From NCBI RefSeq assembly GCF_001194135.2, contig NC_069004.1:31924732-31988731 (forward strand): 64,000 nucleotides of DNA, read 5' to 3'. The stretch is from Octopus bimaculoides. Taxonomy: Eukaryota. Made by a program: the position numbers and the translations under genes. Below the pieces are notes generated by a model. It was not told the origin of the DNA and made no database searches. It worked only from the letters and a program-made list of their open reading frames with translations. Within the stretch, counting starts at the first letter, position 1, and the number at the start of each line of letters is the position of its first letter. Positions 13,324 through 48,649 of this stretch are shown here, in pieces.

Positions 13324-13914
13324 TTAACCCTTTCGTTTCTGTATTTATTTTGAGATGCTCTGTGTTTCTTTCAGTTAATTTTAAATATTATAGGCGCAGG
13401 AGTGGCTGTGTGGTAAGTAGCTTGCTTACCAGCCACATGGTTCCGTGTTCAGTCCTACTGCGTGGCACCTTGGGCAAGTGTCTTCTACTATATCCTTGGG
13501 CCGACCAAAGCCTTGTGAGTGGATTTGGTAGACGGAAACTGAAAGAAGCCCGTTGTATATATGTATATATATATATGTGTGTGTGTGCATGTTTGTGTGT
13601 CTGTGTTTGTCCCCCCTACCATCGCTTGACAACCGATGCTGGTGTGTTTACGTCCCCATAACTTAGCGGTTCAGCAAAATGAGACCGATAGAACAAGTAC
13701 TAGGCTTACAAAGAATAAGTCTTGGGGTCGATTTGCTCAACTAAAGGTGGTGCTCCAGCATGGCCGCAGTCAAATGATTGAAACAAGTAAAAGAGTAAAA
13801 GAGTATAACAAAGAATTTAGTAAAATAACTTCGTTATCATTAAGTTAGTGTTAGGAACATAAATTAAGGTTTGGTGGGAGATTTTAAGTCAGAACTTTTG
13901 CAAACAAGACATTT
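13324..13914. mobile_element. piggyBac-type MITE family 1 copy, interrupted by a SINE and 3'-truncated
   Basis: TTAAccctttcg start; 13328-13388 and 13804-13914 are colinear with the 37722 copy. Confidence 0.8.
13393..13803 (+). mobile_element. SINE family A, full-length, low-divergence copy
   Basis: ggcgcaggagtggctgtgtggtaag...gaaacaagtaaaagagtaaaagag; head nearly identical to the minus copy at 38440-38637. Confidence 0.92.
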
Positions 13915-19084: not shown

Positions 19085-21233
19085 CACTCACTCACACACA
19101 CACACGTTAATGACATGTATTTAGTATGATCAGTCTGTTCCAAGAATGCACTCCTCTCGTCAACTGATTATTATAATTATTATCACTGTTATTTGTTTTA
19201 CTTTTTGTGTGTTTTTGTTATTCTATCTTAGATAAATAGGTTTTTACATTTTTATCCTTCCTATTTCTACAGGAAATCTCTCCTGAAACATTCCTGGGAC
19301 TGTGGAATTACTTGGAAAACTTTACGTAACTTGTGGGAAATTACTTGGAAAAAAAGGGTTTTTTTTTACCGTTATACGTTTTGAAAAGAAATATCATATT
19401 TGGTGAGTGGAAACCCCTTATTTTGTATTTTTTTTTGTTTATTTCTTGGTGTTTTATTTTTTATCTTTAACTGATCATTAAACTGCAGCCATGCTGGGTC
19501 CCCGTCTTGAAGAATTTTTAGTACCTTTTTTAATAAGTGTCTTCTACTATAGCCTTGGGCCAATGAAAGCCTTGTGAGTGGATTTGGTAAACAGGAAACT
19601 CAAAAGAAGCCTGTCCATGTAGCAGAAGACTCTTGCCCAAAGTGCCATGTAGTGGGACTGAACCTGAAACCACATGGTTGCCAACCAAGCTTCTTAACCA
19701 GACAACCATCCCTTATGTTTGTTTGGTTTTTTTGTTTATTTTTTTCTTCAAGTCTGGTACTTTTTCTATCAGTTCTGCTTTGGCAAACTGCTAAGTTATA
19801 TCTATCAGATCAAGTCTAAACTCGGGCTATAAACAACAACAACAACAGTCTACACGTTAGATAATATAGCCTTAGATACACTATGCCTGAATAAAGAAGG
19901 GATCACGACTGGGCTGGGGCTAAACAACAGCAACAAGGGAGGATGCATTAGATAATAGAAAAAATGAGAGGATGGTCATGGAAGGTCTTTGATCATAGGT
20001 GTGTTGGATCAGGATGGACCTGGGGCTAAAACAGAAATAACATCAAATTAACTAACAGATGTTAGATAACATCTGATTGACCGATTAACAAATATTTTAA
20101 TTACTGTGTAATTATCAAAGTTGATTACTTTTGACGTAAGAGCATGACTTTCTTTTATTGTATTTAATTTTTTTTTTGATTAGATTTTTTTTTGTTCAGA
20201 GACCCATAGACGCAGGCGTAGGTGTGTGGCAGAAAAGCATCCTTTGTAACCACACAGTTCCCGGTTCAGTTCCACTGCATGACAGCTTGCGAAGGTGTCT
20301 TTTAAAATAGCTTTTGGGCCAACAAAGGCCTTGTGAGTGCATTTGGTTGGGAGAAATTGAGAGAAGCCTGCCTATATGTATATATACAGATAAAGAAATA
20401 ATTTTATTCTCAAACGTAGGATAATGTTAATAATATAACATGAACAGGATAACCTACCCATATTTTGCAGAAAAATCTGTCGGCAGCCAGCCATGAGATT
20501 TGAACTCGCATCCCTATCCTTATCCGTATCTTTCAATACATCTCAACGCTTCTAAAGCAAACTTTGTTGACTTCTAATGTAAAGCTGAATTTAATATAAC
20601 ATATATATATAGATAGATATATATCATGCTTTAATGTTCATTGTCCGTGCTGGCATGGGTTGGACGGTTTGACCAGGGCTAGCAAGCTGGGAAGCGGCAC
20701 CAGGTTCCAGTCTGATTTGGCTTGGTTTCTATGGCTGGATGCCCTTCCTAACATACCAACCACTGTATAGTGTGTGTGTTGGGTGCCTTTTACATGGTAC
20801 TGACACCAGTGCCGTCCTATGGCACTGTGTGTGTGTGTGTGGATCCTCCTCGAAGGGCTTTCCCTGTCTACCTTTTTACATGCATTTGCCCTCGGCCAGT
20901 CCAATGTAAGACAGTCATGTGTCAGGCATTCGAACAAGGTAACCTTCTCCCCACCACCACCACCCGACCTCCGACCTCCTCAGCCGTGTGGAAATAAATA
21001 CTTGGCTCATCAGCTCAAGAGAAGAAGACCTCCATATCTGGGGTTAGGGTTATCCAGGCATCTGCTCGCTCTCTCTCTCTCACACATACACACACGCACA
21101 CACACATCCATGCATATACTCACACATACAGACATGCACACTTTCTCTTTCTCTCTCTCTTTCACACACACACACACACACACATTCTCTCTCTCACTGA
21201 TGCAGTGTCTCCTCTCTCTCTCTCTCTCTCTTG

Positions 21234-38439: not shown

Positions 38440-38637
38440 CATGACACACAAACACACATACATATACATATATACGACGGGCTTCTTTCAGTTTCCGTCT
38501 ACCAAATTCACTCACAAGGCTTTGGTCGGCCCGAGGCTATAGTAGAAGATACTTGCCCAAGGTGCCACGCAGTGGGACTGAACCCGGAACCATGTGGTTG
38601 GTAAGCAAGCTACTTACCACACAGCCACTCCTGTGCC
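38440..38637 (-). mobile_element. SINE family A, 5' half, young copy
   Basis: Near-identical reverse complement of 13393-13570. Confidence 0.9.
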
Positions 38638-39005
38638 TACAGGAGTGTATACATATTTATGTATGAGTGTATGTGTATACATACACACACACACACACAC
38701 ACACACAGTGTGTTCAGACCCCACACTAATATAGATAACAATGTTCATACAAACACAACCACAAATATCTCCTCTCCAAAATAGCACCCTTATTACCTGC
38801 AGTTCAACCCCTATCTCAGGTGTGTAAACGAGCTTCTCTGCTCTGGGGCCCCTTATATGACTACATAACACCTGACTTGCTTTTTTTCTCTTTCTGTTGA
38901 GATGTTCTGTGTTCATACTGATGTTAACATTGATGATGATAATGATGGTGTATCTTAATTTCTTCTAATATTTCTCTGTTATTTTCCAGTATCACCACTC
39001 CCACC

Positions 39006-39072
39006 ATGACCACCTCCTCCTACCAAATGGATACTAAATTATTACTCTTCCTACTTCTTTTAATACCCCCTG
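39006..39072 (+). CDS. Coding exon 1: signal peptide MTTSSYQMDTKLLLFLLLLIPP (exon begins 38990 with 16 nt of UTR)
   Basis: Acceptor tttctctgttattttccag|38990; ATG in CCACCATG context (second in-frame ATG at 39027); Leu-rich h-region; donor CCTG|gtaagt, phase 1. Joins next exon to give ...LLIPPVLS-VVMTW, a plausible cleavage site. Confidence 0.85.
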
Positions 39073-41895: not shown

Positions 41896-42718
41896 CCTTC
41901 GTCTCTCTCTGTCTCTTTCTCTATTCCTTTGTCTTTCTCTCCCCTCCTCTCTCCTGACTTCTTTGCTCCTCTCAAACCTACTCATCTCTCTCTCTCTCCC
42001 TCGCCAGAAACTTCTCTAACCACCACACCCATTCCTTCTTCCCCACACCATTATCCCTCCAGAATTCTGCTTCCCTACTCATCTACATTCCCCCCCCTCC
42101 CACAAAGGCTTAAACTGAACACCATCAATACAAACTCCAGCAGTTCTGATTGTGTTGAGGACGAGGAGGCAAGATTGCAACAAGCCACAGGAGCAGACAC
42201 AACTGTGAATCCACTTCCTAACCATATGGCTCTAGGTTCAATTCCACCATGTGGCATCTTGGATAAGTGTCTTCAGGTCTCATGTCATGTTGACCGATTC
42301 TTTAGTATTTGGAAAAAGTTTGTAAAAAGTGTGGGTATGTGCGTGTGAGTTAAGAATCTCACTCTCTGACCGCATGGTTTCAGGTTCAGTCCCACAGCAT
42401 GGCACCTCAGGTAAGGGTCATTTACTAGAGCTCCAAGCCAATGAATGCTTTGCAAGTGAATTTGAGAATTTGGTAGACGGAAACTGTGTGGAAGCCTGTT
42501 GTGTGTGCGTATGTATGTAGGTGTGGCACTTGTCTAAGGTATCACACAGTAGGGCTGAACCTGGAACCATGTGGTTAGGAAGCAATCTTCTTACCACAGC
42601 CATGCCTACAGCTCAAGAAAAACGAAAACTCTCTCTTTGTGCCGTCCTGAGTGTCATGTGACTTTCTTTTCTCAATTTCTTATAATTATTTATATGGATT
42701 TTTTTTTTCTTTTTTCAG

Positions 42719-42886
42719 TGCTGTCAGTTGTGATGACATGGGGTCCTTGGGGATCTCTTTCTGGCTGCTCGAAGACTTGTGGATTTGGCACTGAAGAAAG
42801 GACACGCTATGTTGTCGTCGACGGCAGGGAGGACGAGGAGAAAAAAGAAACTCAAATATCTCAATGTTATCTTACACACTGTCCTG
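42719..42886 (+). CDS. Coding exon 2: thrombospondin type-1 repeat #1 (VLSVVMTWGPWGSLSGCSKTCGFGTEERTRYVVVDGREDEEKKETQISQCYLTHCP)
   Basis: Acceptor ttttttcttttttcag|, donor CCTG|gttagt; 168 nt, symmetric phase 1-1; WxxW, CSxTCGxG and RxR motifs. Confidence 0.93.
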
Positions 42887-42954
42887 GTTAGTAACTCCTC
42901 TTTTGTTACACTACCAACATATCTCTACCATGCATCACCATCCCTCTATGCCTT

Positions 42955-43345: not shown

Positions 43346-45514
43346 CTCTTTGCCTTATATCCCTATCTCTGCAACACACTACTAGATAACTACCATTAAC
43401 CCTAATGGGCATCGTGTTGTGCAATGGAGAGGACATGTCCTCTAGTGGGGACCATGGAGTATAGTGAGAAGGGCATTTGGGAAAACATGTAGCTGTCATA
43501 TAGTGTAATATAATGGGACATGATACTGATATGTGAGATGAACAATAACATGTTCTATGTTACCCTAGGTTAACTAATATACCTACTTCTTCTATAAACT
43601 GGCCCTCCTTTGGTTATGACGACGAGGGTTCCACTTGATTTGATCCATGGAACAACTTGCTTGTAAACTCAATGTGCAAGTGGTCGAGCACTTCACAAAC
43701 ATGCATACCCTTAATGTAATTCTCAGGGGGATTCTGCATGACACAGAACATGACAAAGCTGACCCCTTTGTAATTACAGGTACAAATCATTTTTGCCAGA
43801 TGAGTGGACTGGAGTAACAAGAAATAAAGTGTCTTGTTCAAGGACTCAGCACTGACAGGAATTGAACTCATGGCTTTATGCTTGTATACCAAATATCTTA
43901 ACCACTAAGCCACACACCTTCACTACCTCTTCTATAATATTATTCTAGGTTAACAAGTGACATCTCATTAGTTAACCTAGGATAACACTGTAGAACAGTT
44001 AGAAATGTCATAACGTCTCTATTATCCTAGGTTAAACAGGGTTTATAATTGCCTTTATATTGTTAACCCTAATTTAACTATAGATTTTCATGTGAAATAT
44101 TTCATTCCTAAACTCATTTCTTGTGTCATCCGAGGTTAACATTAAAAAACAGATATGTTATAACCTTTCTATTGTTAACCTAGGTTAATGAATGTGACAA
44201 CTTCCCATCTCCCATCGCATAGCAACAACTATAGCTACATATATTTCAATAATAATGATAATAATAATAATAATAATGATAATAAATCTCTTTATGACTG
44301 TTTTCATATTCCAAAATATAATACTTGTGACATTTGTTAATATCCAGTGAACGAGATTACAGATGATGCCAAAACGGCAAATAAAATAAATAAATTGGTT
44401 AATTACCTGAGAATTTCTCAGAGATTTGTGTTCAGGTGTGAAAGGATAATGATTCTACTTATGGTATTTCTTGAAACCTGAGAAGAAATTCCTGTAATTG
44501 ATAAAAGAAATTATTTCGGTAGCTCAGGTGCAAGGCAGCAAAATCTCGCTATTAATTGCAACAGCACTAACAGAGTAAGTTTTTTGTTCTGTTTTTTGTT
44601 TTCTTTATATGTATATGTTCTTAGATTTTTTTGATTTTTTTTTTTTGTTTGGTATTTTGATAAATTTGAGAATTTTTACATCTTTAAAAGCTTCTCAAAA
44701 TCCACAATCTCAGATTTGCGTACTGTTTATTATCTCTGCACTCAATTTGACAGTTAAAGGCAAGGAAATGATGGCTTAAGATTGTAAAGAAGAGGAGAAA
44801 ATTAATTGAAGCCATCATCATCATCATTAAATGTCTGTCTTCTGTGCTGGCATGGGTAGGATGGATTCATAGGAACTGGCAGTCGTCAAGTAACTGCACA
44901 GAGTTCTGCTGTCTGCTTTGGCATGGTTTCTATGGTTGGATACTCTTCCTAACACCAACCATTTCACAGTGTGTGCTGGGTGCTTTTTATGGGGCACCAA
45001 GTAACTTGTGAGACAAGGATCCCCTCAACTGAGAGGGGGAGTAGTATTGAGGGGGGTCGTGCCAGGTAATGAAAAATAGATGATAAAAGGGATGGAAAAA
45101 AGTGTCTTATTATAGAGAAGATACATGGCAACCCCAGTCAGAGAGAGAGGAGTGTTTAACAGAAAGTTTGTTCATTTTGTGTTTTAATATTTAATGGGCT
45201 GGCTGTTGTGTTTTAATGGGCTGGCTTTTGTATTTTAATGGGTTGACATTTGTATTTAATGATTTAAAGTATTGGCATCATCTGCATTGTCTGGCGATGA
45301 ACGAAAGTCAGGAAAAAACTCCATCTTTGGTGGAGAAATCTTCTATTTTCAACTTGATTTCCTTCATCGATGCTTTGGCACATTACACAAAGACACTCAG
45401 GTATCAACTGATGATGGTCATATGCATGTACAATTTTTGAAGCATCAAATGATGACATCTGCTGTTTTAAGGGTTAAGGTAGCTGTGAAGCTGTCACTTG
45501 GGTGCAGATTTTAG

Positions 45515-46170
45515 GTGCAGGTGTGGCTGTGTGGTAAGAAGTTTGCTTTCCAACCTCATGGTTCTGAGTTCAGCTCCACTGTGTGCCGCCTTGGGCAAAT
45601 GTTTTCTACTATAGCCTCAGGCTGACCAAAGCTTTGTGAGTGGATTTGGTAGATGGAAACTGAAAGAAGCCCATCATATATACATGTGTGTGTGTGAGTG
45701 TAAAGATAAGATCCAAGGATCAAAGTGTAGAAAGTTAGTAAGCTTCAAGCAATCCATAGAAGATATGAAAAAACAACTTTCAGGAAAAATAGTGGTTTAT
45801 TGGAGCAGAAGGTTGTGAATTTTTCCTGTATTGAGGTTTGTAAACTTGATGTAATCAAAGAATCCTTGGTCTGAAGAATAGTCACAGTCTACTTTCATTT
45901 GGATAATTACTACTTCCGAGGTTCTGCTAGCTATGAAACATTTGTAGCCTGGATTTTTATCTACTCCATTCCCTAATTCTTGGATATATATGTGCGTGTG
46001 AGTGTCTTGTGTGTCCCCGACTAGCACTTGACAACTGGTGTTGGTGTGTTTACATCCCCATATCACTAGAGGCTGATAGGAAAAGGACCAAGCTTAAAAA
46101 AATTAAGTACCTGTTTGACTAAAACGTTTCAAGGCAGAGCCCCAGCATGGCCACAATCTTATGACAAACA
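45515..46170 (+). mobile_element. SINE family A with ~300 bp of unrelated sequence in its internal microsatellite
   Basis: Head 45515-45685, tail 45990-46170. Other partial A copies at about 5425-5600(+), 7810-7970(-), 19470-19700, 20212-20375(+), 30907-31056(-), 42345-42510(+) and 42520-42608(-). Confidence 0.7.
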
Positions 46171-46261
46171 ATTACAAAAAGCATAAAAGAATAATTCACT
46201 GAATTAACCCATTCCTTTAATAATGTTTTCTTTTTTTATATATGTATATATATTCCCACAG

Positions 46262-46435
46262 TTGATGGCAATTGGACTTTATGGAGTGGATGGTCAGTAT
46301 GTACCAAGAACTGTGGTCCAGTCGGTGTCCAGAAACGAGTAAGGCTCTGTTCCGCACCATATCCTAGCTATGAAGGTAAAGATTGTACGGGACCTTCATC
46401 AGAAACTAAACCCTGTGAAAATGAACCATGTCCCA
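46262..46435 (+). CDS. Coding exon 3: thrombospondin type-1 repeat #2 (VDGNWTLWSGWSVCTKNCGPVGVQKRVRLCSAPYPSYEGKDCTGPSSETKPCENEPCP)
   Basis: Acceptor tattcccacag|, donor CCCA|gtaagt; 174 nt, phase 1-1; canonical VDGxWxxWxxWxxC...RxRxC..P.P...GK.C.G...E...C...PCP with 6 Cys. Absent from the ORF track because it has no start codon. Confidence 0.95.
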
Positions 46436-46589: not shown

Positions 46590-47475
46590 TTGCATTTCAT
46601 TCATCTGTCTTTACGTTCTGAGTTCAAATTCTGCCGAGGTCGACTTTGCCTTTTATCCCTTCGGGGTCGATTAAACAAGTACCAGTTAAGTGCTGGGGTC
46701 AGTGTAATCTACTAGCTCCCTCCCTTCAAATTTCAGGCTTTGTGACTATAGAAGAAAGGATTATCATCATCATCAAGGCAGCAAGCTGGGTGAAATGCTT
46801 AGACATTTCGTCTATCTTTATATTCTGAGTTCAAATTCCACTAAAATCAACTTTGGCTTTCATCCTTTTTTGAGGTTGATAGATTAAGTACNNNNNNNNN
46901 NNNNNNNNNNNNNNNNNNNNNNNNNNNNNNNNNNNNNNNNNNNNNNNNNNNNNNNNNNNNNNNNNNNNNNNNNNNNNNNNNNNNNNNNNNNNNNNNNNNN
47001 NNNNNNNNNNNNNNNNNNNNNNNNNNNNNNNNNNNNNNNNNNNNNNNNNNNNNNNNNNNNNNNNNNNNNNNNNNNNNNNNNNNNNNNNNNNNNNNNNNNN
47101 NNNNNNNNNNNCTGAGGTCAGTTTTGCCTTTCATATTTTCAGGGTCGATAAATTAAGCACCAGTGAAATACTGTGACTTACCCCCTCTCCATAAATTTCA
47201 GGCCTTGTGCCTATCATAGCAAAGATTATTATTATTACTACTACTACTACATAAAGTGGGGAGCTGGCAGAATTGTTAGCACGCTAGATGAAATGCCTGG
47301 TGGTATTTTGTCTGCCATTATGTTCTGAGTTCAAACTCTGCTGAGGTCAGTTTTGCCTTTCATATTTTCAGGGTCGATAAATTAAGTACCAGTGAAACAC
47401 TGGGGTTGATGTAATCGACTGCCCCCCCTTCCCCAAAATCTGAGGCCTTGTCCCTTTACTAGAAATGATTAGTAT
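46590..47475 (+). mobile_element. Tandem SINE family B copies (about 4, spanning a gap) in the intron before the LDLa exon
   Basis: Repeated B core motifs separated by (ATC/ATT)n. Confidence 0.8.
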
Positions 47476-47712
47476 TATCTAACCTGTAACCATCCTTACC
47501 AGCAACATGATTGTTGCTGTTGTCTTCAAAGCCATCCTCACTTATCATTGTTATTATCGTGAGAACCATCATCATCATGATCATTACCATCACTAAACCA
47601 ACCTCCACCACCACAACCTTTCACTGCCACCACCATCCTTTTTCCAAGATCTAAAAACTCCCACCCATTCAAATACTTACCTTCTTTTCTTCTTCTTTGT
47701 TTCGTTTTCCAG

Positions 47713-47945
47713 AAATTCCTCCAGACTTTGACATCAGTGTGTGTAAAAAAGAAAATAAAAGTATATTTATATGTAAGAGTGAGACTCATTGTATTCCGAT
47801 GACAGAACGGTGTGATAAAAAACTACATTGCAACGATGGAAGCGATGAACTCAGGTGTTGGTTAAAATCTCAAAGTGGTAAGATTCCTGCAAGTCTTTGC
47901 ACTTTGCTTCTTCTTTCTGCAGCCTTATTTTCTCTTTGTTTATGA
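47713..47945 (+). CDS. Coding exon 4: LDL-receptor class A module plus C-terminal GPI-type signal (KIPPDFDISVCKKENKSIFICKSETHCIPMTERCDKKLHCNDGSDELRCWLKSQSGKIPASLCTLLLLSAALFSLCL*)
   Basis: Acceptor cttctttgtttcgttttccag|, phase 1; six Cys and DGSDE motif; small residues SQSG, short spacer, then a 16-residue hydrophobic tail ending at TGA 47943-47945. Confidence 0.92.
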
Positions 47946-48120
47946 TTGTTATTATGATTGGTGACATGCAAGGGAGGATCTGTTTCACCCACCTAGGCAT
48001 GGCAAAATATTTGTTGAAATTCGTGTGTGTTCAAATATACATACATATATATGTATATATGGAGTCAACTTGCCATATAACAGCTGTTTGGAAATCTGTT
48101 GTCATACATATATATAAAAA

Positions 48121-48371
48121 AAGAAAAGAAAATGGAGATTAGGAAGTTAATAATTGTTTATTATTGGTCTTCTTCACTTACAGCTGTTTCAATTAATGCT
48201 CAATAAACATTAAATTTACATTTATGTGACATGAACACAATATCATTAGAGGAAAAAAGATAACATCCAAATGTAAATTTAATGTTTACTGAGCATTAAT
48301 TGAAACAGCTGTAAGTGAAGATGACTAATAATAAACAATTATTAACTTCTTAATCTCCATTTTCTTTTCTT
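48121..48371. repeat. Long inverted repeat: 103-bp arms (48121-48223 and 48269-48371), 45-bp spacer
   Basis: Base-by-base pairing (i+j=96492) gives 99/103 Watson-Crick pairs; exceptions on the + transcript are G48142:U48350, G48166:U48326, U48170:U48322 and A48203:C48289. Confidence 0.95.
48202..48335 (+). promoter_or_regulatory. Candidate polyadenylation signals AATAAA (48202-48207, 48330-48335)
   Basis: First two AATAAA hexamers downstream of the stop at 47945; usage not demonstrated. Confidence 0.45.
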
Positions 48372-48604
48372 CTTTTAAATGAATATAAACTATATATTTT
48401 AGTATACACCCATTAGTTTTAGGAAATTCATTCCCCCACCCAAATACTAGGTATTGAAGCAGTATTTCCTTGAATGAAACCATCCCTCCATGAGATTTAC
48501 ATATCCTCTAATTAAATTTAATAATTATATATTTTTTTTCTCACTCTACATACATGTATGAGAAATTATGATAAACACAAGTGTATATCATTTGTGTATG
48601 TGTG

Positions 48605-48649
<45 letters not shown>

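What the first reader, a model, noticed from the sequence alone, without database searches (positions are those of the whole stretch)
48121..48371. 103-bp near-perfect 3'UTR hairpin that contains both poly(A) signals, with an A:C mismatch inside AATAAA
Seen: arms start about 175 nt after the stop, with 99/103 WC pairs, two G:U, one U:U and one A:C. Both AATAAA hexamers (48202, 48330) lie in the stem, and the A:C mismatch is A48203, the second A of the first hexamer. Established: long dsRNA is an ADAR substrate, A opposite C is a favoured editing context, and coleoids edit extensively. Inference: folding or editing (AAUAAA to AIUAAA) could control 3'-end choice, or the stem could yield small RNAs. 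It may simply be a young MITE.
Basis: partly seen in the sequence, partly recalled or inferred. Interest (0 to 1): 0.7.

Follow-up and report, generated by a model that had tools for sequence, protein, structure and literature searches.

The report
Ordinary palindromic repeat in octopus intron
The 103-bp near-perfect hairpin is real, but it most likely lies in the last intron, not the 3'UTR, of a small Octopus bimaculoides gene, and the sister species has lost most of it, so it looks like one of the many ordinary double-strand-forming repeats of octopus genomes, not a poly(A) switch.

Summary
The sequence observation is exact. Arms 48121-48223 and 48269-48371 give 99 WC, 2 G:U, 1 U:U and 1 A:C pair (A48203). 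The loop is 45 nt, the RNA MFE is -148 kcal/mol (z = -23), and both AATAAA hexamers lie in the stem.

The window is Octopus bimaculoides. Only its RefSeq models place a stop at 47943-47945, and they do so by reading through a GT donor at 47879. O. sinensis, O. vulgaris and Argonauta hians models, and mRNA contigs from an unidentified cephalopod, splice there to a conserved terminal exon (…MLTAL.L..). By synteny that exon falls in the 100-N gap at 52065-52164. The hairpin is therefore most likely intronic, 242 nt past the donor.

O. sinensis carries the element at the orthologous site as a ~73-nt remnant: 57 nt of one arm plus 14 nt of the other. About 190 nt are deleted, both hexamers are gone, and the segment is inverted relative to the gene. 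The palindrome therefore predates the species split and is not conserved.

No other copy exists in about 220 kb of cephalopod sequence. No target-site duplication is visible, and no Rfam family matches.

Best reading: a neutral foldback or MITE-like palindrome that is passively a likely ADAR substrate. Low interest.

The parts
48121..48223 (+). Left arm of the palindrome (103 nt). Contains AATAAA at 48202-48207, ATTAAA at 48209-48214, and TTTATT at 48157-48162, which pairs with the second AATAAA.
48224..48268 (+). 45-nt unpaired spacer (loop).
48269..48371 (+). Right arm (103 nt). Contains AATAAA at 48330-48335. C48289 lies opposite A48203. This arm and its flank 48388-49144 have the clear orthologue in O. 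sinensis (L003 74338-73536, minus strand).
48105..48120 (+). Weaker outer extension of the left arm (48115-48119 pair with 48373-48377 after the A:C mismatch at 48120:48372) and the TA-rich microsatellite flank. Collinear alignment with O. sinensis stops at 48110.
48372..48387 (+). Weaker outer extension of the right arm and its flank. No target-site duplication is recognisable against the left flank.
47713..47878 (+). Exon encoding the LDL-receptor class A domain (…CDKKLHCNDGSDELRCWLKSQS). Phase-1 acceptor after cag at 47710-47712. Ends at a conserved donor.
47879..47945 (+). Read-through of the donor (GTAAGA…) to TGA at 47943-47945. It gives the tail GKIPASLCTLLLLSAALFSLCL, which is used only in the O. 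bimaculoides RefSeq models. In the orthologues this is the start of the last intron.
46259..46435 (+). Second TSP1-repeat exon of the same gene. Its phase fits the LDLa exon (A + AA = Lys).
42718..42887 (+). First TSP1-repeat exon.
38991..39071 (+). Signal-peptide exon (…MDTKLLLFLLLLIPP).
52065..52164 (.). 100-N assembly gap. By synteny it stands for O. sinensis L003 76697-84077, which holds the conserved terminal exon (L003 82110-82193). The exon is not found anywhere in the window.

Best explanation
The feature is a genuine palindromic (foldback-type) DNA repeat of about 250-260 bp, not seen elsewhere in the sequence available here. It lies inside the transcription unit of a small secreted or membrane-tethered gene (signal peptide, two TSP1 repeats, one LDLa domain, hydrophobic tail).

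In the conserved gene structure it sits in the last intron, 242 nt downstream of the 5' splice site at 47878/47879. It is not in the 3'UTR. The O. bimaculoides RefSeq stop is most likely an annotation consequence of the true terminal exon lying in an assembly gap.

The palindrome arose before O. bimaculoides and O. sinensis split. Its origin is either a MITE or foldback insertion or a local inverted duplication, and this is unresolved. Since then it has evolved essentially neutrally. In O. bimaculoides the arms have picked up four single-arm point changes. In O. sinensis a slippage-type deletion between ATCTTCA and ATCTCCA removed about 190 nt of the stem.

Mechanistically (inferred, not shown), the pre-mRNA would fold into a stem of about 103-109 bp and be promiscuously hyper-edited by ADAR, like the very many other near-perfect dsRNA-forming loci in this genome. 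The two AATAAA hexamers are incidental A+T-rich words with no role in 3'-end choice.
For: The structure is real and extreme.

Species and gene model: the window is 100% identical to O. bimaculoides GCA_001194135.2, and the RefSeq CDS ends at window 47945. The exons were mapped by tblastn, and their phases fit.

Splicing: the donor G|GTAAG is conserved in O. sinensis and Argonauta. The spliced tail …SW…MLTAL.L.. is present in O. sinensis, O. vulgaris and A. hians models. It is also present in an intronless 218-aa ORF, P0008, carried on many Logan contigs, the longest 2.8 kb, read here as mRNA contigs of an unidentified cephalopod. The O. sinensis tail exon at L003 82110-82193 has a strong acceptor and the correct phase. 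L003 76697-84077 has no counterpart in the window and is bracketed by matches on either side of the gap at 52065-52164.

Orthologous remnant in O. sinensis: rc(post flank), then 57 nt of one arm, then CATTTTCTTTTCTT (the exact reverse complement of the arm's outer 14 nt), then a TA microsatellite like the O. bimaculoides left flank. That 14-mer occurs only 3 times in 184 kb counting both strands, twice in the remnant itself. The remnant folds at only -23.4 kcal/mol.

Every arm-to-arm difference that the 57-nt O. sinensis remnant covers (48142, 48166, 48170, plus 48120 in the outer extension) is derived in one arm only when polarised by O. sinensis. The A:C site at 48203 lies in the part O. sinensis has deleted, so it cannot be polarised.

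Long near-perfect dsRNA-forming loci make up about 4.4e-3 of the O. bimaculoides genome and are the main hyper-editing substrate (PMC5625713). That is roughly one such locus per window of this size, and this hairpin is the only one above 90% complementarity in the window.
Against: The O. bimaculoides RefSeq models from two annotation releases do end at 47945. The read-through frame is also open to the same stop in O. sinensis, with a hydrophobic tail (GKVPASLGTLLLSAALFSLSL*). An alternative isoform ending by intronic polyadenylation near the hairpin therefore cannot be excluded.

The missing exon might be truly deleted in O. bimaculoides and not merely unassembled.

The arm divergence (4/103) is somewhat lower than expected from flank divergence if both arms evolved independently since before the split (expected 7.7-13; Poisson P = 0.12 to 0.003). 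That could mean arm-to-arm gene conversion or some constraint.

No RNA data were available, so transcription, editing and 3' ends are all inferred. The origin (transposon or local duplication) is unresolved.
Confidence: 0.7

Rival explanations
1. The hairpin lies in a genuine 3'UTR (or an alternative terminal exon made by intronic polyadenylation). Its folding, or ADAR editing of AAUAAA to AIUAAA at the A:C mismatch, controls which poly(A) site is used.
For: The O. bimaculoides RefSeq CDS stops at 47945, and the first two AATAAA hexamers after it are both in the stem. A opposite C is a favoured ADAR context (established knowledge). The read-through ORF is open in O. sinensis as well. Octopus edits heavily (PMC5625713).
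Against: The splice donor and the downstream terminal exon are conserved in four other cephalopod sources. The O. bimaculoides terminal exon is expected to lie in an assembly gap. In O. sinensis the first hexamer is deleted, the second is mutated, the stem is reduced from -148 to -23 kcal/mol, and the segment is inverted. AATAAA occurs about once per kb here by composition alone. All three substitutions in the read-through tail are non-synonymous, and Argonauta has no such tail.
Confidence: 0.05
2. A young MITE that inserted recently in O. bimaculoides: high copy number, and absent at this site in relatives.
For: Long terminal inverted repeats, small size, no coding capacity, and only 4% arm divergence. 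MITE families are annotated in Octopus (PMC13282606).
Against: The orthologous site in O. sinensis is occupied by a deletion derivative that keeps both termini and both flanks, so the insertion predates the split. No target-site duplication is recognisable. There is no second copy in 99.6 kb of O. bimaculoides, 92 kb of O. sinensis or 29 kb of Argonauta. An old MITE or foldback origin remains possible and is included in the best explanation.
Confidence: 0.05
3. The stem is maintained in O. bimaculoides by selection or by arm-to-arm gene conversion because the dsRNA has a lineage-specific role, for example in splicing of the last intron, nuclear retention, or as an editing-inducer element for nearby exonic sites.
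For: There are fewer arm differences (4) than the 7.7-13 expected under independent neutral evolution since the split. The hairpin lies only 242 nt from a 5' splice site.
Against: The deficit is marginal at the lower divergence estimate (P = 0.12). It vanishes if the palindrome formed shortly before the split. Gene conversion in palindromes needs no function. The sister species tolerates loss of the stem. There are no compensatory double changes; every arm difference that O. sinensis can polarise is a single-arm change that breaks or weakens a pair.
Confidence: 0.08
4. The stem is a precursor of small RNAs (hpRNA/endo-siRNA or a miRNA).
For: It is a long perfect hairpin like Drosophila hpRNA loci. 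There are sub-threshold Rfam matches to long plant MIR hairpin models.
Against: The Rfam scores are far below the gathering thresholds (51 against 139.7 bits, and 43.6 against 140) and reflect hairpin shape only. [quoted passage not shown] A 103-bp stem is not miRNA-like. The stem is not conserved in O. sinensis.
Confidence: 0.03
5. The palindrome is an assembly artefact of the short-read O. bimaculoides assembly, a chimeric join at an inversion breakpoint.
For: Relative to O. sinensis, the sequence to the right of the hairpin is inverted. A second nearby block (50207-50925) is inverted too. The window is full of N gaps.
Against: The two arms differ at four positions, and no exact shared stretch exceeds 32 nt, so they are distinct k-mer paths within one gap-free contig (47112-49149). 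O. sinensis, from an independent assembly, keeps termini of both arms at the orthologous site. In O. sinensis the inverted block is bracketed by two inverted ~420-bp repeats that are 87% identical, a natural substrate for a real inversion.
Confidence: 0.03

Closest known systems
Palindromic ~200-bp Harbinger-derived MITEs of Xenopus tropicalis, the most hyper-edited repeat of that genome (PMC5625713)
   Same: A self-complementary element of about 200-260 bp with a short loop. It folds on its own into a tight, nearly perfect dsRNA when transcribed within a gene, so it needs no neighbouring inverted copy to be an ADAR substrate.
   Different: The frog element is a defined high-copy family with a consensus. 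Here no second copy, no target-site duplication and no family assignment could be shown, and editing was not measured.
Inverted Alu pairs in human introns and 3'UTRs (hyper-edited long dsRNA)
   Same: Long intramolecular dsRNA inside a pre-mRNA or UTR. Promiscuous A-to-I editing is expected. Mostly neutral, with occasional effects on retention, splicing or 3' ends.
   Different: Those stems form between two separate SINE insertions of about 300 bp, hundreds of bases apart. This one is a single palindrome with a 45-nt loop and unknown origin.
Drosophila hpRNA loci and foldback (FB) elements
   Same: Long near-perfect inverted repeats with a short spacer.
   Different: hpRNAs are defined by Dicer-2/AGO2-dependent endo-siRNAs, and molluscs show no such pathway (PMC12479628). 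FB elements have long arms made of internal tandem subrepeats, which these arms lack.
Unstable long DNA palindromes (deletion by slippage across the hairpin; arm-to-arm gene conversion)
   Same: The asymmetric internal deletion in O. sinensis lies between 7-nt imperfect direct repeats (ATCTTCA / ATCTCCA) and destroys the symmetry. The O. bimaculoides arms are slightly more alike than expected.
   Different: That behaviour is documented mainly in bacteria, yeast, and mammalian transgenes and sex chromosomes. Here it is inferred from a two-species comparison only.

Membership tests
MITE (miniature inverted-repeat transposable element) | Terminal inverted repeats, small size (<800 bp), no coding capacity | tested here: met
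   103-109-bp arms, about 263 bp in total, only trivial ORFs.
MITE (miniature inverted-repeat transposable element) | Target-site duplication flanking the TIRs | tested here: inconclusive
   No matching 2-10-bp duplication at any plausible boundary in O. bimaculoides (…CATATATATA|AAAAAAAG … CTTCTTTT|AAATGAAT) or in O. sinensis. The flanks are low-complexity and about 10% diverged.
MITE (miniature inverted-repeat transposable element) | Multiple dispersed copies in the genome | not testable with these tools
   No whole octopus genome can be searched. There are zero extra copies in 99.6 kb of O. bimaculoides, 92 kb of O. sinensis and 29 kb of Argonauta, which only bounds the copy number loosely (below about 8e4). 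The metagenome scan gave chance 19-31-mers only.
MITE (miniature inverted-repeat transposable element) | Recent insertion: empty orthologous site in a close relative | tested here: not met
   The O. sinensis site is occupied by a deletion derivative with both termini.
3'UTR regulatory hairpin that masks or edits poly(A) signals | Lies in the 3'UTR of the mature mRNA, upstream of the cleavage sites actually used | tested here: inconclusive
   True only for the O. bimaculoides RefSeq read-through model. The conserved donor and the conserved downstream terminal exon in four other sources place it in the last intron. No RNA data are available for O. bimaculoides.
3'UTR regulatory hairpin that masks or edits poly(A) signals | Structure and signals conserved in related species | tested here: not met
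   In O. sinensis about 190 nt are deleted, both hexamers are lost, the segment is inverted relative to the gene, and the MFE is -23 against -148 kcal/mol.
ADAR hyper-editing substrate (long near-perfect intramolecular dsRNA) | A stem of at least ~50-100 bp, nearly perfect, within one transcript | tested here: met
   103 bp with 4 non-WC positions, inside the gene's transcription unit on the sense strand.
ADAR hyper-editing substrate (long near-perfect intramolecular dsRNA) | Clusters of A-to-G RNA-DNA differences | not testable with these tools
   No RNA-seq access. The expectation rests on PMC5625713.
hpRNA / endo-siRNA locus | Dicer-type 20-24-nt duplex small RNAs from the stem | not testable with these tools
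   No small-RNA data here. The literature reports no endo-siRNA pathway in molluscs, including O. bimaculoides (PMC12479628).
Known RNA families (Rfam 15), including miRNA precursors | Score at or above the family gathering threshold | tested here: not met
   The best matches are MIR2606 at 51 bits (threshold 139.7) and MIR4208 at 43.6 bits (threshold 140). These are plant long-hairpin models and match on shape only.

The most novel reading that the evidence does not exclude
In O. bimaculoides the gene really has two alternative hydrophobic C-termini. One is the conserved spliced tail. The other is a read-through tail ended by intronic polyadenylation inside the palindrome. Folding of the 103-bp stem, or editing of A48203 (AAUAAA to AIUAAA), would tune the competition between splicing at 47878 and cleavage at the masked sites. 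This would be a lineage-specific switch that O. sinensis has lost.
Probability: 0.04. Interest if true: 0.6.

Novelty: new member of a known kind. Interest (0 to 1): 0.13.

Why it matters
As a biological finding it matters little. Long near-perfect inverted repeats inside transcripts are abundant in O. bimaculoides and are already known as the bulk substrate of its hyper-editing.

The useful outcomes are practical:
1. The O. bimaculoides RefSeq models of this gene (XP_014789123, XP_052832159 and their isoforms) probably carry a false C-terminus, because the conserved terminal exon lies in an assembly gap.
2. The two-species comparison gives a clean example of palindrome decay by an asymmetric internal deletion.
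3. It also shows a small inversion bracketed by inverted SINE-like repeats.

If the improbable novel case were true, it would be a rare example of editing or structure gating an intronic poly(A) site.

Tried and rejected
- Protein search with the last-exon peptide alone found nothing. The word index missed the orthologues, and longer queries found them.
- DNA for O. vulgaris could not be fetched because the gene range is too long, so O. vulgaris could not be used to polarise the deletion or the inversion.
- Exact-protein look-ups of P0004 and of two small window ORFs (82 aa and 52 aa) found no independent O. bimaculoides DNA or RNA contigs.
- The gene range returned for O. bimaculoides ends at the stop codon, so it carries no UTR information.
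- The metagenome scan with a 19-mer conserved in all three arm copies gave 87 loci, all chance matches of at most 31 nt.
- Rfam gave only sub-threshold hairpin-shape hits.
- A search for the terminal exon in the window and in L002, by tblastn and by blastn, was negative.
- I considered that the palindrome was created by the inversion itself, through staggered-break duplication. I rejected this because such duplicates would sit at opposite ends of the inverted block, not 45 nt apart, and because O. sinensis keeps both termini.
- I considered that the O. sinensis single-arm state is ancestral. I rejected this because the exact 14-nt terminus of the other arm, plus the TA flank, sit beside the 57-nt arm.

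Full report
**1. The observation**

The inverted repeat is exactly as described. With pairing i+j = 96492, positions 48121-48223 pair with 48371-48269. That gives 99 Watson-Crick pairs, G:U at 48142 and 48166, U:U at 48170, and A:C at 48203:48289.

The repeat finder reports the repeat as 119-nt arms, 92% complementary, 45 nt apart. After an A:C mismatch at 48120:48372, five more A:U pairs extend the stem to 48115/48377.

As RNA, 48100-48395 folds at -148.2 kcal/mol, against -41.1 +/- 4.6 for shuffles (z = -23).

AATAAA is at 48202 and 48330, and ATTAAA is at 48209. All three are in the stem. The next AATAAA is at 49016. AATAAA occurs 1.08 times per kb on this strand, and the local sequence is 73% A+T. 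The hairpin is far beyond chance; the hexamers are not.

**2. Where the window comes from, and the gene**

The window is 100% identical to Octopus bimaculoides GCA_001194135.2 (L002 coordinate = window + 35620).

A + strand gene has these exons:
- about 38991-39071: signal peptide
- 42718-42887: TSP1 repeat
- 46259-46435: TSP1 repeat
- 47713-47878: LDLa domain (Pfam E = 6.8e-7)

The intron phases are compatible.

The O. bimaculoides RefSeq proteins (P0004 = XP_014789123 and isoforms; P0006 = XP_052832159) continue through 47879 to the TGA at 47943-47945. This gives the tail GKIPASLCTLLLLSAALFSLCL.

**3. Why '3'UTR' is doubtful**

The sequence at 47878/47879 is AGTG|GTAAGA, a good donor. It is conserved in O. 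sinensis (G|GTAAGG) and in Argonauta hians (G|GTAACT).

The models of O. sinensis (P0003, P0005), O. vulgaris (P0001, P0007) and A. hians (P0002) all splice there to a terminal exon. That exon encodes A.S.SWH.V…MLTAL.LA..

A 218-aa orthologue, P0008, is encoded without introns. The index lists it on well over 100 Logan contigs, the longest 2.8 kb, which I read as mRNA contigs. They come from an unidentified cephalopod; the contigs read are from runs SRR8281680, SRR8281675, SRR20545810 and SRR25158135. It ends in the homologous …AGSVAW…LMLTALKLTS. The spliced tail is therefore expressed and old.

In O. sinensis the tail exon is at L003 82110-82193, behind a long polypyrimidine tract and CAG, in the right phase. 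No trace of it exists in the window or in L002, by tblastn or by blastn.

Synteny explains why. Window 51751-52022 matches L003 76418-76697, and window 52165-52801 matches L003 84077-84735. The 7.4 kb of O. sinensis that holds the exon therefore corresponds to the 100-N gap at 52065-52164.

The likeliest reading is that the O. bimaculoides models were forced to read into the intron. The hairpin would then lie in the last intron, 242 nt past the donor.

Caveats remain:
- The read-through frame is also open to the same stop in O. sinensis (GKVPASLGTLLLSAALFSLSL*).
- However, its three substitutions are all non-synonymous, the 3-nt indel lies in a CTT run, and Argonauta has no such tail.
- An alternative isoform ending by intronic polyadenylation cannot be excluded without RNA data. 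I give it roughly 25%.

**4. The orthologous site in O. sinensis**

Window 47127-48110 aligns collinearly with L003 72130-73083. Window 48313-49144, however, aligns to L003 74338-73536 on the minus strand.

Read along L003, the sequence is:
- rc(right flank) …ATATAGTTTACATTCATTG
- AAAAGAAGAAAAGAAAATGGAGATTAGGAAGTTCATAATTGTTTTTCATTGGTCATCTTCA, the outer 57 nt of an arm (5 differences from rc(right arm), 4 from the left arm)
- TTTTCTTTTCTT
- a TA/CA microsatellite

CATTTTCTTTTCTT is the exact reverse complement of the arm's outer 14 nt. It is followed by a TA run, as on the left of the O. bimaculoides element. A separate BLAST hit links hairpin positions 4-35 to L003 74361-74329. The 14-mer occurs only 3 times in 184 kb, twice in this remnant.

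O. sinensis therefore holds both termini and both flanks, with about 190 nt missing between ATCTTCA and ATCTCCA. This is a slippage-type deletion of a pre-existing palindrome.

The remnant folds at -23.4 kcal/mol. Neither AATAAA survives: the first is deleted, and the second reads …GAAAAAC… on the relevant strand.

The whole block is inverted relative to the gene. It lies between two inverted copies of a ~420-bp repeat (L003 73139-73528 on the + strand and 74440-74858 on the - strand, 87% identical).

The palindrome therefore predates the species split and is dispensable in the sister species.

**5. Arm evolution**

Of the four arm differences in the 103-bp stem, three (48142, 48166, 48170) lie in the part O. 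sinensis retains. At each of these, and at 48120 in the outer extension, O. sinensis agrees with one arm. Positions 48142 and 48166 are derived in the right arm. Positions 48170 and 48120 are derived in the left arm. The fourth stem difference, the A:C site at 48203, lies in the part O. sinensis has deleted, so it cannot be polarised.

None of the polarised differences is compensatory; each weakens or breaks a pair.

Four differences in 103 nt is fewer than the 7.7-13 expected from flank divergence (identity 82-92%). The Poisson P is 0.12 to 0.003, depending on the rate assumed. This is compatible with formation shortly before the split, or with arm-to-arm gene conversion. It is not persuasive evidence of selection.

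**6. What kind of element it is**

No second copy exists in the 64-kb window. None exists in 99.6 kb of O. bimaculoides, 92 kb of O. sinensis or 29 kb of Argonauta. No target-site duplication is recognisable.

A metagenome scan gave only chance matches. Rfam gave only far sub-threshold matches to long plant MIR hairpins.

The origin therefore stays open: an old MITE or foldback element, or a local inverted duplication. 'Young MITE absent in relatives' is refuted.

**7. How it most likely behaves (inferred)**

As part of the pre-mRNA the stem would form and would be hyper-edited.

Porath et al. found that O. bimaculoides has the strongest hyper-editing signal of 19 species. They found about 4.4e-3 of loci able to form long, nearly perfect dsRNA, and they describe a palindromic ~200-bp Harbinger repeat in frog as a self-sufficient substrate (PMC5625713). 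That density predicts about one such locus per window of this size. This hairpin is the only inverted repeat above 90% complementarity among the longest in the window.

Small-RNA production is unlikely. A mollusc-wide survey that included O. bimaculoides found no endo-siRNA pathway (PMC12479628).

**8. Verdict**

The regulatory interpretation is not supported, although the ADAR-substrate inference remains plausible in a generic sense. The feature is an ordinary member of a known, abundant class. Interest is low. The residual novel reading, an editing- or structure-gated intronic poly(A) switch, has a probability of about 4%.

Noticed in passing
window 47879-47945 and gap 52065-52164 (L003 82110-82193): The O. 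bimaculoides RefSeq proteins of this gene (XP_014789123/4, XP_052832159-61) end in a read-through tail. They lack the terminal exon conserved in O. sinensis, O. vulgaris, Argonauta and an unidentified cephalopod's mRNA. By synteny the exon falls in a 100-N assembly gap, so the models are probably wrong at the C-terminus.
   Followed up: yes
window 48111-49149 vs L003 73536-74439; window 50207-50925 vs L003 76419-75693: Two neighbouring blocks are each inverted between O. bimaculoides and O. sinensis while keeping their order. In O. sinensis the first block is bracketed by inverted ~420-bp SINE-like repeats that are 87% identical, which suggests repeat-mediated inversion. The second block was not explained. 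A 44-nt match (window 49880-49923 to L003 74899-74858) is also reversed.
   Followed up: partly
window 13388-13807, 995-1294, 31856-32206, 34846-35156, 38444-38640, 45512-45701: An abundant ~420-bp interspersed repeat, SINE-like and unclassified here, has many copies in both orientations in the window and at least 15 copies in the 92-kb O. sinensis locus.
   Followed up: no
L091-L094 (Logan runs SRR8281680, SRR8281675, SRR20545810, SRR25158135): mRNA contigs of 2.7-2.8 kb from an unidentified cephalopod encode a 218-aa orthologue (P0008, 58% identical) with the same architecture: signal peptide, two TSP1 repeats, an LDLa domain and a hydrophobic tail. The species was not determined.
   Followed up: partly
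window 47879-47945 / L003 72870-72935: The intronic read-through frame is open to the same TGA in both Octopus species and encodes a hydrophobic tail in both (a 3-nt indel and three non-synonymous changes). This may be chance in a T/C-rich tract, or it may be a genus-specific alternative C-terminus.
   Followed up: partly
window 19271-19400: The N-terminal extension annotated in O. vulgaris and O. sinensis (…KSLLNRSWDSGITWKTLRNLWEITWKKRVFF…) matches the window in two pieces in different frames. In O. bimaculoides this stretch is probably 5'UTR or an unsound upstream coding exon. O. bimaculoides isoform X1 uses a different first exon.
   Followed up: no
window 48163-48329 and 48182-48310: Rfam E-value-mode hits to plant MIR2606 and MIR4208 (51 and 43.6 bits, against gathering scores of about 140). 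They arise because any long perfect hairpin scores against these long-stem models, and they are not evidence of a miRNA.
   Followed up: yes
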